Part shown: one piece after another, positions 48,822-55,242 of the stretch
Layout of the letters: the number at the start of each line of letters is the position of its first letter
How positions within the stretch are numbered: position 1 is the stretch's first letter
Assembly: GCA_904063045.1 (NCBI GenBank)
Contig: CAJFCJ010000003.1
Span: forward strand, 1,984,001-2,048,000
DNA: 64,000 nt
Source: Dimorphilus gyrociliatus
Lineage: Eukaryota; Animalia; Annelida
Direction: 5' to 3'
The notes under the pieces: model-generated
The model's database searches: none
What the model was told of the DNA's origin: nothing
The model's input: only the letters and a program-made list of their open reading frames with translations
Translations under genes and position numbers: made by a program

Positions 48822-49793
48822 ATGCCTATTTCCAGCCCTGATGAGCTGGAAACGGCGCTGGTAGATCTTACTAACAACATGGAAAAGGTATTAGAAACCA
48901 CAATGTCAATTTGGAATGAAACAAAAGACGTTTATGAATTTATAAAAAATCCAGGAAAATTAAGTAAAATGGGAAGTCTTATCGGACTTTACCACCAGTT
49001 TTTCATTCATTGCGAAATAGGTAGTCTAATGGACTTAGAAAGGATCTTTAAACAGTTTTATACAAAATTATCAGTTCAGGAAGCAGTTGCAGGTGTGTTT
49101 TAAATATACTGTATTTATTTATCTTTTCCATTCTATCACTTGATAGACTACGACTTCGTTGAAAGAAAATGGAACAGATTTCTTGAAAATATTGATGATA
49201 AACTAAATCCATCTTATTATAGAATATCTACTGTAAACTCCATTGCACCAATAGAAACACGGTTAAAATCTCTAGATGGACAAACTGTTTTATTAAAAAA
49301 TCTTGTTGAAAAAAGTTCAAGTACTGTCTTGGTCCTATTAAGACATCTTGCTTGAGTTCCGTGACGTCGACATGTCGTCGAACTTACTAACAATATGCAT
49401 AAATTTTCAAACTTGGAAACAAACATCATTGTTATTTCGTTTAGTGGAATGGAAGGTGTTAAACTTTGGAAGAGAGACACCGGTTGTGAATTTCCAGTTT
49501 TTGTTGACGAAGAGAGGATTCTTTACAAGACAATTGGTCTAAAAGTGACTGTTGCAAAAGTTTGGAGCTCAACTTCATTAGGTTACTACGCCGAAGTCTT
49601 AACTAATGGTGGAAAATTAATTAGCCCCTATTCTAACATAAAAGATGACCCTAATCAAATGGGCGGCAACGTGATAATTGATAATACAGGAGTTTATCGA
49701 TTTATTTATAAAAGCAAAACGCCACAAGACAGACCTAGCATGGAAGAATTAGAATCGTCAATTAAATCCTTGCATATTGTTAGTCGAATTTAG
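48822..49793 (+). CDS. SELENOL: Selenoprotein L (thioredoxin-like/AhpC-TSA_2 fold) with a UxxU motif encoded by two in-frame TGA codons; 305 aa if both are read as Sec
   Basis: Exon 48822-49092, 54-nt intron, exon 49147-49793. The frame stays continuous through TGA 49353-49355 and TGA 49362-49364 (VLVLLRHLA-U-VP-U-RRHVVEL), followed by family motifs FPVFVDEERILY and DPNQMGGNVIID, and a downstream SECIS. Confidence 0.93.
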
Positions 49794-49804
49794 ACTGAAT
49801 AACA

Positions 49805-49874
49805 GTATTGAGTCGAATGACAATCGAATATGAAAATCAATTGATGTATTCGATTTGATAATCTATTCCAATAC
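49805..49874 (+). promoter_or_regulatory. Eukaryotic type II SECIS element in the SELENOL 3' UTR
   Basis: ATGA 49817-20 / TGAT 49856-59 quartet; 10-bp helix II AATCGAATAT 49822-31 with GTATTCGATT 49846-55; unpaired AAA 49833-35; mini-stem ATC(AATT)GAT 49836-45; helix I GTATTG 49805-10 with CAATAC 49869-74. Confidence 0.92.
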
Positions 49875-49923
49875 ACCATTTTTAAAATTAGGTAAAATAA
49901 AAAAAACTTTGTATAAAAAAAGT

Positions 49924-52900
49924 TCACTTGCAAATTCCGTTCAAGTATAACGTGGCACTTCCTTTTTCGCAGTAGCAAACCATTCGAGCTGTATATTCCC
50001 CCGCTACTGGTGGGGAGAAAGTGACAGGCAAACTTAAAAAATGCCCGTTTCTGATTGTAACATTCGAACATTTTAAAGAGAAAGGTTCGGAAGGTTTATC
50101 AAAAGTCATTTTTACGGATTTTTTACAACGATTCTTAATGGCCAGCTTTTTAGTTTCGGATTTACCAATACTTGTACAAAAATCAACCGAATTAGGACCG
50201 ATTGAAACACCTTGTATAACAGTTGTTGAATCCGTCGATTGAGAAGATGGTGGTACAGATCTAGCAGGGGCCGTAGCTGATAATAATTCAAACGATTCTC
50301 CTTTCAACGTCACTCTTGAAACACTAGTTTTCCATCTATTCTTGCATTTTACTTCCCATGTTTGAGTAAATAATCCAGAGTCCAGAGGTCGAAATTGAAC
50401 AGTTATCTGATTACAAAAACAATACTATTAAAAATAGTAGTTCCTTATATTTAGTACTTTTACCTTACAAGTAGAGTTACCCTGAGCGATACCTGCTACT
50501 TTTGAAAACTGAAAAACAACGTAAGTCACTCGAAAATAGTCTCGACTGTTAGATGCTTTTGAATAAGGGGGAGCGAAAGGACTCAAACTCCATTCTACAA
50601 TATCTGTTGTGGTATTCTGTAACTCAAATTCTAACTCCTCAAGCCTGCCAGATTTAGCACGACCAAAGTCAACCATTGGTTGAAAAACGAGTAGAGAAGA
50701 ATTTGAGGCTACATTGGTTGGTGCTGCCTTTCGAGAGTCATGGCGATGTTGTGTCGGAGTGGTCTGACTGCCTTCAACAATTTCGACGTCAAATTTCTAA
50801 AAAACATACAGATTAATGATGATAAATGAAAAAAGGAAAATCTTTGTAAAGCAAACCTTTGTCTCTTTATTGCAAACAACGAATACGGAGCCTGTCCACG
50901 GAAATGTTGTAATATCAGCATCTTCGACAACAGAAGCCCTTAATGCAACTGAGGATTTTGGTGAGATATGACCTTTTCCAGGATATATATTAATTGTATG
51001 AGCAGGCCAGTTTGCGTCGAATCGTAAAGTATGAGATGAAGAATTTATAAGTTTTACAGTACTACAGCCTAAATCAGATATTTTGTTTGAACTAATTGAT
51101 ATGGATTTGGGTTCTAGTTGCCAAGATGGTTCATCAGTTTCCCAATAAGCAGGTGGCAACTCCGTATCTTTGGATGAGTCACGTCTAATAGTTGCGCTTA
51201 GCATCCTTGCTTCTTCAAGAGCTGTAACATCATGAGAAGCCTGTAGTGGCTGAAATCGTTGTGTGTCGTTTAGATCAAAGGTTATCAAAAACTTTATCCT
51301 TTTCAAGTCTTGAATAAAAGTCTTAGAGTCAATACGAATTCTAGAAGGAAGCGACTTTTCGGCTGTACAAGAATCCTCATTTCTAAAGTTTCCTGTAAAA
51401 TTCGTATCCGCAAGAATATCATCTCCTTTTATATGAGATCCTGAGCCGTAAGTTTTTTTAAGCATCCTCCTTGCGAATTCCTCCCCATAAAAAACGCACA
51501 AAACTCCACATACAGACTGTTTATCAACAACGAACATCTCATCTACCTTCAATTTGATTTGAATTTCCTTTACTTGATTGGGTAACAGGCAAAATTCATA
51601 ATTTTCCAACTCAATGTGTTCAAACTTTTCTTGACAGTCAGTGTCTCTAAATGCCAATATTTTATTGAAAGAGCACATATTTCCTGCATTTTTTAAAGTC
51701 AGGTAGCATGTGCCTTTTCCATCGGGCCGTATAGTTTCAATTTGTATCATCCCGAAACCATTGTCTGGTCGAAATCTGGTTCCAGGAGCGACAAGTTCAG
51801 CGGAACCAGAGTAGGCATACAACGGTAAAAAACAATTCGTGTGCCAAGATTCCTTAACGGACAGGCCCCCTTCTATGAATATATTTTCCAATTTGCCTGA
51901 CTGATTAGAACAGGAAAGGCTGATTTCTTCTCCTTTATTAGGGGAAAGTACTAGTTCATCAGTACTCTCTACTTTAAATCCGGAACCGCTTTGATGTTTG
52001 ACACTCAATCGTATATCGACTTTCTTTTGACTAGTTGTTTTCAATATTAGTTCTCTCCTCTTAAGCTCTCCTTTCGTGATTCTACCAAACATAAGAGAAT
52101 TCTTATTGGCTTCAATAGTTGGAATTGGTTTAACAATTGCCATTGCATCTATTTCAAAATCTTTATCTCCAGGCTTTCTCCTTAGAACTATAGCACTTTT
52201 AATTTCTGAATTTTCTTCTTCATTTCCAATACAGCTAAATTTGACAGTAATTTCACATTCGTCTTTCGGATTTAGTCTGAAATCGTTAGGTTCAACACGG
52301 AAGCAATTATTCTCAGACATAGTATTAACCTCAATGGGTATAGTTCCAGAATTTTTTACCCTAAATTTCTGTCTAGAAATACTCTCTTTTTCTCTCTTTC
52401 CTTCAAAGACTATAAAACGCAAACTTCTTGTATTTGTATGCAATATAGGACTTCCGACTAATGCCTTTAAAGATATTCTTCCCAAATTTAATGAACTACC
52501 AGGTGTATCTAAATCCAGAGAGAGTATTGCATTCAATTGTAAAGGATTCTGATTTAGGGCGTCCACTAAGGAACATGTACAAAACACAAAGATATGGAGA
52601 ACATTTGCGTCAGGTCTTGAATTGTCAGCCTTTGGAATGACGTAGCTGTCAGTCGTCGGTCGATTCACGTTCGAAGGAGCAAAATAAAAATGTTTTGAAT
52701 TTTCTATAGTTAATTTAACAGGTAGATCACATTTAGAATAATTTCTTAAGGTTAAAAACTTATTTTCACACACATCCCAACACAAGTTTCCGAAATTTAA
52801 TTCAGCAGAAGGGGCAACTTCTATAACAGGTAGTTCAGCTTCAGCAGAAATATATACATAAGTAGCAAACCCTGAAGTGGTGTTTCTTTTTGCAGCTGGA

Positions 52901-55242
52901 ACAACTTCAATTCGAATCTCTCCGACATATAGACCAGCAATTTTTGGAACAAATAAAATTCTTACGTCACGGGTACACCCAGGCTCTATAGTGTCACTGC
53001 TCTTAAATAAAAATGGAACTTCCGAATCTGAAAGTGTTTTACTATCCAGGGTTATTTTGCTGGCAAACAAGGAAACTGACAACCATCGAGAAGTAGGATT
53101 TGTAATGGAAATTAAACTACTGATACTCATACCGACACAAACATTACTATCAAATATGAGTTCTTTAGGAATAACATCTATAAAAACTGGTCCACTTGTG
53201 TTCGGAGGGGTACTTAAAACAGCAGGCGTGCTTTGCCACTGAGGAGCGAATGGTGTATCTGGACTTGGAGTATAATACGAATCTTCAGGCGGGAGAAGTC
53301 CAATACTTAACTTCGTGTCTGGAGCCAATGCTCCCACAGTAAGTTTACTACTTTCAGTTTCATCGTGATATCTTCTATACGAATCATTTGCATTAATAAA
53401 TCCTGATGGCGTCGGTGGAACTTTCATTGTATTAGGAGTGCTAGTCATCTGTTTCTCTCCACTGTTCCTCCTCATGTGCAAACTATGTTCTATTAAATCC
53501 TGCTCTTGTCTCTTGTCTCGTTCTTTCATGCTACCCCTCAAACCTATAGCACTAGGACGAGGCGAAGCCCAATGGCGATCTTCCTCTTTTTCTAAAGCCA
53601 GTTCTATCTCTTTCTTTATGGCTTCTACTGTTGAGTGAGGTATCTTTTTTTTCTCACTCCTCTCTACCGATGCTTTTTTGGATTTTATCAATATTTCGAT
53701 AAGCTTTTGAATATCATCTTCTTGATCAATAACTTCATCTGTTAAATTTTGTGAGGTAACAGGATTTTCCAGCGATAAATGAGGCTCATTCGTCTGATTT
53801 GACCACACAGATGTAGTTGATGTAATTTTACTATCTCCTGAATCTTTTCTGGTGCAATCGTCAGACGGCTTCGATTCAAGACTTTCAGTACTTAATCGGC
53901 AAACTTTCTCGGAATTGCAAGAGAGGCGATGTTCACTCCATTTAGAATCGTTGAATACATCACTATTATTCATATGGTTATCTAAAGGGGTAGGTGTCAA
54001 TGGTCTCTTGAATGGATCAACTTCATCCTCATAATCTAATGCTTTAATACAATTCTCTTTGTCATCACCCTCATTGCTTTCTTTATAAGATGTAGGTTGG
54101 TCAATGAGCGGGGTGGCTTGTCGATGGACAGGTGGAGAAACTATTTCCTTTCCCCAGCTGGGTCGTCTTATTAGATCATTAGCAGTAAGCGAGCCTAGAG
54201 GTTCCGACTTGCTAAACACAGCAGCTTGAAAAGCCTTTTGACCATCAATTTTATCAGATGATGTATACCATTCTTCCCACGAGGCAGCAGTATGCGTTGA
54301 TCCACCCAAAAATTTCGAAACTTCACAGCTATCGTCCTGCTCCTCCGATTCAAGAAATTGTCTCTGTATAATTTATAACTAAAAAAAATGATTTGGTAAA
54401 AACAACACATTACTTCTAGAACTGGATGATCCTGTTTTACTTGTTCTTCGTCAGCATCGAATATCGCTTCGTAATTTTCGCCTGTTAATAATCAAAGAGT
54501 GAACGAACTAAAATACTATTTAACTAATAAATTACCTGAGCAGAATTTTTCGTCACTTTGCTGAGACATATTTTCACCATTCTCATCAAAAAACCCTCGA
54601 TCGTCTGCAAAAAGAAATATTAACACGACTTTTAAAATTATTGAAAAACCTTTACCATATTCCTCACTACCGTCTGATCGCAAATCAATCAGATCCGGTT
54701 GAACAGGTTTTAACGAAACGTTTGTTTTCTCAAACATCATTGAATCCAAACCTCCCTCAAACATAGATGATTGATCTGCTTTGTGATATGTTGGTTGTAA
54801 ATACATAGCAGCCATTCCAGTCTTACTCTGTTTATTATAATTATTATATTGTTATACTTTTATTTTTGTATGTCATCACAGCAAAACAAACTATTAAGTA
54901 CCTCATCAATTGTTTCATCTTTTGATTGCTTTTCAAATATGCTCTTGAGATCCATATCATTTTCGCTATTTTCTTCCATAATTAACTTCCAATCAATTTT
55001 AGGGAGCTTGATTTTTCCTTCAATGAGCGAGGGCTCATTTGAGGCGGTTGCATCTGTATTGTCTTTTAAAAAAGTCATTCAGATGAACTGAAACTATGTA
55101 ACGTGATATATTTCTTACCAAGCGTCGAGAAAGATGAAGTGTCCGCATTTCCTATAAAATCATCTCTGAAATGATGCACACTGACTTTTGAAGATTTCTT
55201 TTTCGTTCAAATGTTGTCTACCTACCCTGAAGCTTCAGCCAT
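49924..55242 (-). CDS. CEP192: Centrosomal protein CEP192/SPD-2 (C-terminal ASH/PapD-like domains), multi-exon with one exon of about 3.5 kb
   Basis: Start MAEASGDDFIGNADTSSF, a long disordered N-terminus, then tandem ASPM/SPD-2/Hydin-like Ig domains (ISITNPTSRWLSV, LTLRNYSKCDLPV, FRVKNSGTIP, VDFGRAK, FELQN); stop at 49924. Confidence 0.82.

What the first reader, a model, noticed from the sequence alone, without database searches (positions are those of the whole stretch)
49805..49874. Canonical type II SECIS hairpin 12 nt after the SELENOL stop codon
The sequence shows all SECIS parts: an AUGA/UGA non-Watson-Crick quartet, a 10-bp helix II (9 Watson-Crick pairs plus one G-U), unpaired AAA, an apical mini-stem and a 6-bp helix I. 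It lies about 440 nt downstream of the second UGA and is independent support for Sec recoding.
Basis: seen in the sequence. Interest (0 to 1): 0.7.

Follow-up and report, generated by a model that had tools for sequence, protein, structure and literature searches.

The report
SECIS hairpin of selenoprotein L gene
The 70-base hairpin just after this gene is almost certainly a genuine selenocysteine-insertion (SECIS) signal that lets the ribosome read the two UGA "stops" of a selenoprotein L gene as selenocysteine; this is a sound annotation of a well-known kind of element and not a discovery.

Summary
Window 49805-49874 (+) contains a 6-bp helix I, an AUGA/UGAU non-Watson-Crick core, a 10-bp helix II (9 Watson-Crick pairs plus one U·G), unpaired AAA and a 3-bp apical stem. 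It begins 12 nt after the TAG stop and 441 nt after the second in-frame UGA.

- **Score:** Rfam SECIS_1 gives 36.5 bits (gathering score 35). It is the only SECIS hit in the window.
- **Chance:** my own descriptor finds it once, against 0.01 hits per shuffled window.
- **Gene:** it is a two-exon selenoprotein L, with an AhpC-TSA_2 domain and the motif LLRHLA-U-V-P-U-R. The same two TGA codons occur in eight relatives' loci.
- **Expression:** a spliced transcript contig and a metatranscriptome contig both run from the coding sequence through the hairpin.
- **Conservation:** in the closest relative (73% protein identity), third codon positions are 49% identical and the hairpin 89%. All eight changes fall in loops, at the free core positions, or convert A-U to G·U.
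- **Machinery:** the genome encodes tRNA-Sec, SepSecS and eEFSec.

Caveats: the apical stem is weak. This sequence's thermodynamic optimum is a different, non-conserved pairing register. The poly(A) site was not mapped.

The scan had already reached the same reading on this window (s1-080340). Verdict: a real but ordinary SECIS, a new member of a known kind.

The parts
49805..49874 (+). SECIS element as a whole (helix I, internal loop, core, helix II, AAA, apical stem-loop)
   Evidence: Rfam RF00031 scores 36.5 bits at 49806-49873. Pairs were listed. 62 of 70 bases are identical in relative L011.
49805..49810 (+). Helix I, 5' strand (GUAUUG); pairs with 49869-49874 (CAAUAC)
   Evidence: Six Watson-Crick pairs. 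In L011, A49807 is G, which turns A-U into G·U and keeps the pair.
49817..49821 (+). 5' half of the core: A, then UGA, then N (AUGAC)
   Evidence: Read from the sequence. AUGA is unchanged in L011. The metatranscriptome variant X2 has C49821U, which is the free N position.
49822..49831 (+). Helix II, 5' strand; pairs with 49846-49855
   Evidence: Ten pairs, 9 Watson-Crick plus U49831·G49846. In L011, A49822 is G, which turns A-U into G·U.
49833..49835 (+). Unpaired AAA motif, preceded by unpaired G49832
   Evidence: Read from the sequence. Invariant in all seven SECIS candidates aligned in A2.
49836..49845 (+). Apical stem-loop: 3 bp (AUC/GAU) with loop AAUU
   Evidence: Kept in the fold when the core bases are blocked from pairing. 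It contributes -1.4 kcal/mol. Identical in L011, so there is no covariation evidence.
49856..49859 (+). 3' half of the core (UGAU)
   Evidence: Read from the sequence. L011 has CGAA: GA is kept and both flanking N positions are changed.
49353..49364 (+). TGA GTT CCG TGA, the U-V-P-U redox motif and target of the SECIS
   Evidence: In frame with the ORF. Two TGA codons stand at the same place in L011, L012 and L015-L020. They align to residues 161 and 164 of P0027.
48822..49092 (+). SelL exon 1 (ATG at 48822)
   Evidence: Frame and GT donor read. The splice is confirmed by the X3 contig.
49093..49146 (+). 54-nt GT..AG intron
   Evidence: The X3 contig skips exactly these 54 nt (table 5).
49147..49793 (+). 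SelL exon 2, up to stop TAG 49791-49793
   Evidence: Translation. The part after the second TGA matches Pfam AhpC-TSA_2 at 2.8e-12.
49896..49901 (+). AATAAA, candidate poly(A) signal 22 nt after the SECIS
   Evidence: Read from the sequence. L011 has ATTAAA at about the same place. Use of the signal was not shown.
49924..50313 (-). Last exon of the convergent Cep192 gene (context only, not part of the element)
   Evidence: ORF; Pfam Cep192_D8 at 1.6e-17. Its stop lies 130 nt from the SelL stop.

Best explanation
Window 49805-49874 (+) is the single SECIS element of a selenoprotein L (SELENOL) mRNA. In the transcript it folds into helix I, an internal loop, a kink-turn core of tandem sheared G·A/A·G pairs (AUGA opposite UGAU), a 10-bp helix II, an unpaired AAA and a small apical stem-loop.

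By the established eukaryotic mechanism, SECIS-binding protein 2 binds the core and recruits eEFSec carrying Sec-tRNA(Sec). Ribosomes that reach UGA 49353 and UGA 49362, about 440-450 nt upstream, then insert selenocysteine at both and do not terminate. The result is the U-x-x-U diselenide redox motif of a thioredoxin-fold (AhpC-TSA_2) protein.

Shown here: the sequence and structure features, the model score, the position in the transcript, conservation in a relative, and the presence of tRNA-Sec, SepSecS and eEFSec genes. Inferred: SBP2 binding, actual Sec insertion, and the fold adopted in vivo.
For: 1. Rfam SECIS_1 scores 36.5 bits against a gathering score of 35. It is the only SECIS hit and the only hit below E 0.01 in the 64-kb window.

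2. A hand-written descriptor gives one hit in the window, at this site, against 0.01 per shuffled window.

3. The gene is SelL. The two ORF pieces align to residues 95-160 and 165-301 of full-length relative P0027, and the two TGA codons fall on its positions 161 and 164. Nine loci, including the window, carry two in-frame TGA codons in LLRH[FLY]A-TGA-x-P-TGA. The C-terminal piece matches AhpC-TSA_2 at 2.8e-12.

4. Transcription: the 6114-nt X3 contig has the 54-nt intron removed and runs through the hairpin. X2, a 363-nt metatranscriptome contig, spans 49529-49891.

5. Conservation in L011, whose protein is 73% identical and which has the same SelL/Cep192 layout. Third codon positions are 69/142 identical and the SECIS 62/70. 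The eight differences are two A-U to G·U changes in the helices, two at the free N positions of the core, and four in the internal loop. There are none in AUGA, GA, AAA or the apical stem. In L011 the SECIS form is the minimum-energy fold, and most of its pairs have probability 0.95-1.0. L011 itself scores 33.1 bits on SECIS_1.

6. More distant SelL loci carry the same architecture in their 3' UTRs: [A/G]UGA, a 10-11 bp helix, AAA, an apical stem, then NGAN. At most 3.6% of shuffled UTRs give a hit.

7. Machinery in the same genome: tRNA-Sec at 80.7 bits with anticodon TCA, SepSecS, and the eEFSec domain III at 136 bits. A second SECIS scoring 42.3 bits lies elsewhere in the genome.

8. [quoted passage not shown]
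Against: - Unconstrained folding of the window's own 70 nt prefers another register: 49806-19 paired with 49847-60, at -15.3 against -10.9 kcal/mol. The SECIS-form pairs have only about 0.1-0.2 probability in that ensemble. Such models do not credit the kink-turn or protein binding.
- The z-score of the fold against shuffles is only -1.9.
- The score clears the Rfam cut-off by only 1.5 bits, and the whole-window scan in 'gathering' mode missed the element.
- The apical stem is 3 bp and shows no covariation.
- There are only two close relatives, so no double compensatory change was seen.
- Contigs cannot show mRNA ends, and the X3 contig also runs into the convergent Cep192 gene. The poly(A) site is therefore unmapped.
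- There is no direct evidence of Sec insertion.
Confidence: 0.93

Rival explanations
1. The hairpin is a chance AT-rich inverted repeat, or a remnant of a small mobile or miRNA-like hairpin, that happens to resemble a SECIS. The TGA codons would then be real stops, or the gene broken.
For: The sequence is 26% G+C and contains a direct repeat of TCGAAU that gives alternative pairings. The Rfam score is only 1.5 bits over the cut-off. Weak miRNA-model hits overlap the region, for example mir-1006 at 16.5 bits.
Against: E is 0.0012 for the whole window over all families, and this is the only SECIS hit. The descriptor gives 0.006-0.01 chance hits. The element sits exactly where a SECIS is required, behind two TGA codons that are conserved in nine loci. 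The coding sequence downstream of the TGA codons is under purifying selection: second codon positions are 92% identical and third positions 49%. The hairpin is conserved at 89%, with substitutions that respect the structure.
Confidence: 0.02
2. The conserved hairpin serves mainly the other strand or the gene pair. It could be a 3'-end or termination signal, or a regulatory hairpin of the convergent Cep192 transcript, with the SECIS resemblance secondary.
For: The two stop codons are only 130 nt apart. The X3 contig joins both genes. A coral metatranscriptome contig covering the Cep192 end stops exactly at 49874, the 3' edge of the hairpin. The stretch 49875-49900 is also fairly well conserved in L011.
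Against: The minus strand folds less well (-12.2 kcal/mol, z -1.15) and gives no Rfam family hit of note. The invariant positions are exactly the plus-strand AUGA, GA and AAA. SelL needs a SECIS, and there is no room for another in the 130 nt. A second role on the minus strand would not exclude the SECIS role.
Confidence: 0.03
3. It is a functional SECIS, but of type I and not type II. The 14 nt between the strands of helix II (GAAAAUCAAUUGAU) would form an open apical loop carrying the AAA, and the 3-bp stem would not form.
For: The stem is only A-U, U-A and C-G, and is worth about 1.4 kcal/mol. Infernal aligns this part with low posterior probability, about 0.5. It shows no covariation, being identical in L011.
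Against: Folding with the core blocked from pairing keeps the stem. The 10 nt are a perfect palindrome, fully conserved in L011. The other SelL SECIS candidates have clearer apical stems after the AAA.
Confidence: 0.2

Closest known systems
Eukaryotic SECIS element, Rfam RF00031 (SECIS_1); type II form as defined in PMC3753652
   Same: Full-length match to the model (positions 1-64 of 64) at 36.5 bits. The core fits UGAN/KGAW, helix II has 10 bp, the AAA is unpaired, there is an extra apical helix, and the element lies in the 3' UTR.
   Different: Very AT-rich (26% G+C). The apical helix has only 3 bp. The element starts only 12 nt after the stop codon, inside a 130-nt gap between two convergent genes. 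Mammalian 3' UTRs of selenoprotein genes average about 1 kb (PMC3316567).
SECIS of selenoprotein L (SelL/SELENOL) genes of fish and marine invertebrates (Shchedrina et al. 2007, as cited in PMC2397514 and PMC3316567; invertebrate SelL genes in PMC3473315)
   Same: One SECIS serves two UGA codons three codons apart (the U-x-x-U motif). The protein has the same architecture: an N-terminal domain followed by an AhpC-TSA_2 fold. The SelL relatives fetched here (L012, L015, L017, L019) show the same SECIS plan.
   Different: In those relatives the element lies about 85 to 425 nt after the stop and has a longer apical stem. Two of them use GUGA where this one has AUGA.
Other SECIS elements of the same genome (L001 = G000:C6:947667-947731; earlier scan notes s1-081159 and s1-081068)
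   Same: The same AUGA ... AAA ... UGAU plan and the same AT-rich helix II.
   Different: They belong to different genes (a SelU/PRXL2-like ORF, SELENOO and a deiodinase). L001 scores higher, at 42.3 bits.

Membership tests
Eukaryotic SECIS element (Rfam RF00031) | Covariance-model score at or above the curated gathering score (35 bits) | tested here: met
   36.5 bits with a full-length match, at 49806-49873. The scan with Rfam's fast filters missed it.
Eukaryotic SECIS element (Rfam RF00031) | Non-Watson-Crick core: (A/G)UGAN on the 5' side, KGAW on the 3' side, with tandem G·A/A·G | tested here: met
   A49817-UGAC 49818-21 opposite UGAU 49856-59. The consensus is taken from PMC3753652.
Eukaryotic SECIS element (Rfam RF00031) | Helix II of about 9-12 bp between the core and conserved unpaired adenines | tested here: met
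   Ten pairs, 49822-31 with 49846-55, followed by G and AAA 49833-35.
Eukaryotic SECIS element (Rfam RF00031) | Helix I below an internal loop | tested here: met
   Six Watson-Crick pairs, 49805-10 with 49869-74. The internal loop has 6 nt plus A49817 on the 5' side and 9 nt on the 3' side.
Eukaryotic SECIS element (Rfam RF00031) | Located in the 3' UTR of an mRNA with an in-frame UGA, beyond the minimal UGA-SECIS spacing of 51-111 nt | tested here: met
   It starts 12 nt after the TAG stop, and 441 and 450 nt after the two TGA codons. Transcript contigs link the coding sequence and the hairpin. The spacing rule is from PMC3316567. The poly(A) site itself was not mapped.
Eukaryotic SECIS element (Rfam RF00031) | Structure conserved in orthologues, with pair-preserving changes | tested here: met
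   L011 has 62/70 identical bases. Both helix changes are A-U to G·U and no pair is broken. Only one-sided changes were seen, with no double compensatory change, and only two close relatives are available.
Eukaryotic SECIS element (Rfam RF00031) | Binds SBP2 and supports Sec insertion at UGA | not testable with these tools
   This needs a reporter, 75Se labelling or a binding assay. The genome does encode tRNA-Sec, SepSecS and eEFSec. SBP2 itself was not searched for, because it has no specific family model.
Type II SECIS | An additional helix (helix III) above the unpaired adenines, so that they sit in an internal loop or bulge | tested here: inconclusive
   The 3-bp stem 49836-38 with 49843-45 and its 4-nt loop are predicted when the core is blocked from pairing. 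The stem is worth only 1.4 kcal/mol, has no covariation, and has low alignment confidence in Infernal.
Selenoprotein L (SELENOL) | Two Sec codons forming U-x-x-U at the redox motif of a thioredoxin-fold or peroxiredoxin-like domain | tested here: met
   TGA GTT CCG TGA lies at 49353-64 in frame. The same holds in eight other loci. AhpC-TSA_2 matches at 2.8e-12.
Selenoprotein L (SELENOL) | Family-specific N-terminal region joined to the Prx-like domain; overall length about 300 aa | tested here: met
   Exon-2 piece 49149-49352 aligns to residues 95-160 of the 306-aa P0027 (E 3e-8). The C-terminal piece aligns to residues 165-301 (E 6e-30). The pieces were searched apart, and the joined protein was never submitted.

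The most novel reading that the evidence does not exclude
In this species the SECIS could act as a two-state switch. The window's own sequence favours an alternative 14-bp hairpin (49806-19 with 49847-60) that buries the AUGA/UGAU core. The element also starts only 12 nt from the stop codon and abuts, or overlaps in antisense, the 3' end of the convergent Cep192 mRNA. Terminating ribosomes, SBP2 availability or antisense pairing could therefore tune how often the two UGA codons are decoded.
Probability: 0.04. Interest if true: 0.5.

Novelty: new member of a known kind. Interest (0 to 1): 0.2.

Why it matters
The element confirms that the two TGA codons at 49353 and 49362 are Sec codons. The gene should therefore be annotated as one full-length SELENOL protein of about 300 residues, not as a truncated ORF or two fragments. 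Standard gene callers split or mistranslate it: many relatives in the protein collections are C-terminal fragments of about 130 aa, or carry W at the two positions.

It is also a compact example. The SECIS starts 12 nt after the stop, in a 3' UTR of roughly 110-130 nt if the AATAAA at 49896 is the signal used, inside a 130-nt gap between convergent genes.

A practical point follows for automated scans. An AT-rich SECIS can clear Rfam's gathering score and still be lost by the fast filters. Beyond that it is ordinary: SelL genes with a single SECIS have been described in fish since 2007 and in sponges, placozoans, cnidarians, annelids and amphioxus since 2012 (PMC3473315).

Tried and rejected
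- **Rfam, whole window, 'gathering' mode:** no hit. This was a filter miss, not an absence, as searches show.
- **Word-based protein search:** it gave nothing with the 142-aa C-terminal piece or the N-terminal ORF of L011, and only P0005 with the last 65 aa. These blanks are explained by the length window and by fragmented gene calls.
- **Metagenome pattern scan:** an exact 26-nt pattern from the top of the hairpin found 0 matches in metagenome contigs. No further close relatives could be added.
- **Own-genome scan with RF00031:** only 120 of 1459 candidates were scored, and the scan did not even return the window's own element. It cannot be used as a census of SECIS elements.
- **Rfam SECIS_1 on distant SelL loci:** L012 scored only 22.9 bits and the others were not listed. 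The support from distant orthologues therefore rests on my descriptor, which requires pairing by construction. The only control is the shuffles.
- **Loci without a descriptor hit:** L016, L018, L020 and L021. L018 and L021 hold only 117 and 92 nt after the stop.
- **MAFFT alignment A2 of seven SECIS candidates:** three rows are out of register by one column on the 3' side. I did not build a covariance model or count pairs on it.
- **Joined protein:** the spliced, read-through protein was never submitted to any search. In one script a 28-residue context around the TGA codons was printed with U at TGA, for display only.
- **Organism:** earlier scan notes call the genome that of a tiny annelid. 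I did not test this.

Full report
**Observation**

The sequence at 49805-49874 reads GUAUUG / AGUCGA / A-UGAC / AAUCGAAUAU / G-AAA / AUC-AAUU-GAU / GUAUUCGAUU / UGAU / AAUCUAUUC / CAAUAC. A script listed every pair.
- Helix I is 49805-10 with 49869-74, six Watson-Crick pairs.
- Helix II is 49822-31 with 49846-55, nine Watson-Crick pairs plus U49831·G49846.
- The apical stem is 49836-38 with 49843-45.
- The core is U49818·U49859, G49819·A49858, A49820·G49857 and C49821·U49856, preceded by A49817. This fits the published core consensus UGAN/KGAW (PMC3753652).

The stop TAG is at 49791-93. The in-frame TGA codons are at 49353-55 and 49362-64. AATAAA is at 49896-901.

**Is it more than chance?**

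Rfam's SECIS_1 model matches 49806-49873 end to end at 36.5 bits, against a gathering score of 35. E is 5.2e-6 on 281 nt and 0.0012 for the whole window, both strands, all 4227 families. No other family comes below E 0.4 anywhere in the window. The default gathering-mode scan missed it, which was an effect of the speed filters.

A descriptor of my own requires the following:
- ATGA plus one free base (N);
- 9-12 consecutive pairs;
- AA just after the helix;
- N-GA on the 3' side;
- a helix I of at least 5 bp.

It finds exactly one site on either strand of the window, this one. Dinucleotide-shuffled windows give 0.01 sites each. A looser version hits 0.6% of shuffles of the 130-nt region.

**The gene**

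- Exon 1 runs from ATG 48822 to 49092.
- A 54-nt GT..AG intron follows.
- Exon 2 runs from 49147 to the stop.
- The part after the second TGA matches Pfam AhpC-TSA_2 at 2.8e-12.

An exhaustive HMMER search with that piece found 467 relatives. Many are fragments of about 130 aa that begin just after the position of the TGA codons. Full-length ones (P0027, P0032, P0055) read LLRH[FY]A-W-x-P-W-R, with W wherever a gene caller translated TGA.

The window's two pieces align to residues 95-160 and 165-301 of P0027. This leaves exactly W161-D-P-W164 for TGA-GTT-CCG-TGA. In the DNA of eight fetched loci the two positions are TGA in every case. This is the U-x-x-U signature of selenoprotein L. Its two Sec residues are known to be served by a single SECIS (PMC3316567; Shchedrina et al. 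2007 as cited in PMC2397514). The gene is single-copy in the genome.

**Is the hairpin in the mRNA?**

A 6114-nt contig of run X3 (organism A) has the 54-nt intron removed and continues through the hairpin. A 363-nt contig of a marine metatranscriptome (X2, 98% identical) spans 49529-49891. Six of X2's seven coding differences are at third codon positions. Its only difference in the hairpin is C49821U, the free N of the core.

No AATAAA or ATTAAA lies between the stop and 49874. Contigs cannot show ends, and the X3 contig runs on into the convergent gene. The poly(A) site therefore remains unmapped.

**Comparison with relatives**

The closest relative is P0005 (73% identity) on L011, a 6-kb Logan contig with the same SelL/Cep192 layout. 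It has the same TGA-x-x-TGA motif, with synonymous changes in the two codons between. Its hairpin lies 6 nt after its stop and scores 33.1 bits on SECIS_1.

| Region | Identical to the window |
|---|---|
| First codon positions | 80% |
| Second codon positions | 92% |
| Third codon positions | 49% |
| Hairpin | 89% (62/70) |
| Linker between stop and hairpin | 3 of 6 aligned bases, plus a 5-nt gap |

The eight hairpin differences fall as follows:
- A49807G in helix I, turning A-U into G·U;
- A49822G in helix II, turning A-U into G·U;
- U49856C and U49859A, the two free core positions;
- four changes in the internal loop.

AUGA, GA, AAA and the apical stem are untouched.

More distant SelL loci (L012-14, L015, L017, L019) have the same plan in their 3' UTRs: [A/G]UGA-N, a 10-11 bp helix, AAA, an apical stem, then N-GA-N. 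Their helix sequences are unrelated. At most 3.6% of shuffled UTRs give such a hit. Rfam's model is insensitive to these elements, with L012 at 22.9 bits and the others unlisted. This support is therefore weaker.

**Machinery**

The same genome (77.9 Mb) encodes:
- a tRNA-Sec, at 80.7 bits on RF01852, which ARAGORN calls tRNA-SeC with anticodon TCA;
- SepSecS, in three exons;
- eEFSec, detected by its euk_SelB_III domain at 136 bits.

It also carries another SECIS scoring 42.3 bits, behind a SelU/PRXL2-like ORF.

**Caveats**

Unconstrained folding of the window's 70 nt prefers a different register. Bases 49806-19 pair with 49847-60 in a 14-bp helix with four G·U pairs, made possible by the repeated UCGAAU. 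Its energy is -15.3 kcal/mol, against -10.9 for the SECIS form, whose pairs have only 0.1-0.2 probability in that ensemble.

When the core bases are forbidden to pair, the SECIS form becomes the optimum at -13.5 kcal/mol. In L011, G49812U and G49815A destroy the alternative register. There the SECIS form is the plain minimum-energy fold, and most of its pairs have probability 0.95-1.0. The alternative is therefore not conserved and is probably incidental.

The apical stem is 3 bp and worth 1.4 kcal/mol. 'Type II' is therefore the likelier label but not a secure one.

**Context**

The downstream neighbour is a convergent Cep192 gene. Domains D1-D6 lie on 50800-54309(-) and D8 on 49927-50313(-). 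Its stop codon is at 49924-26, so only 130 nt separate the two stops and the SECIS fills 70 of them. A coral metatranscriptome contig covering the Cep192 end stops at 49874. The two mRNAs may abut or overlap there.

**Comparison with what is known, and verdict**

This is a standard eukaryotic SECIS of a standard SelL gene. SelL genes have been catalogued in sponge, placozoan, cnidarian, annelid and amphioxus genomes since 2012 (PMC3473315). An earlier follow-up of this scan on the same window reached the same reading (s1-080340).

Other notes on this genome call it a tiny annelid (s1-081068, s1-081159). I did not test that.

The finding is real and useful for annotation, and not novel in kind. 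Confidence that it is a functional SECIS is 0.93.

Noticed in passing
window 49794-49926 (both strands): SelL (+) and a Cep192 gene (-) converge with only 130 nt between their stop codons. The X3 transcript contig runs through both genes, and a coral metatranscriptome contig covering the Cep192 end stops exactly at 49874, the 3' edge of the SECIS. The two 3' UTRs may overlap in antisense.
   Followed up: partly
window 49806-49819 with 49847-49860: An alternative 14-bp pairing register buries the AUGA/UGAU core and is the thermodynamic optimum in this sequence (-15.3 against -10.9 kcal/mol). It is abolished by two substitutions in the relative L011.
   Followed up: yes
L012:1110-1157 and L012:1443-1490: A SelL orthologue of an unknown organism (Logan SRR27871382) carries two near-duplicate SECIS-like elements 333 nt apart in its 3' UTR, one with AUGA and one with GUGA. 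SelL is described as having a single SECIS. This could be a real duplication or an assembly artefact.
   Followed up: no
L001 (G000:C6:947667-947731): A second SECIS of the same genome scores 42.3 bits on RF00031. It begins about 50 nt after the stop of a SelU/PRXL2-like ORF.
   Followed up: partly
L016:948-1039: A near-perfect 90-nt palindromic hairpin lies upstream of a SelL orthologue on a 556-kb ENA contig. It hits several miRNA models equally on both strands (mir-7131 at 51.5 bits, below its cut-off). It looks like an inverted-repeat element and not a miRNA.
   Followed up: no
window, whole: The Rfam scan in 'gathering' mode with fast filters returned nothing for the whole window, although the SECIS scores above the gathering score with laxer filters. 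AT-rich SECIS elements may be missed systematically by that mode.
   Followed up: yes
protein collections (P0001-P0150): Many SelL relatives in the public protein sets are C-terminal fragments of about 130 aa starting just after the UGA pair, or full-length products with W-x-P-W where TGA was read as Trp. The family appears to be widely mis-called in automated gene sets.
   Followed up: partly
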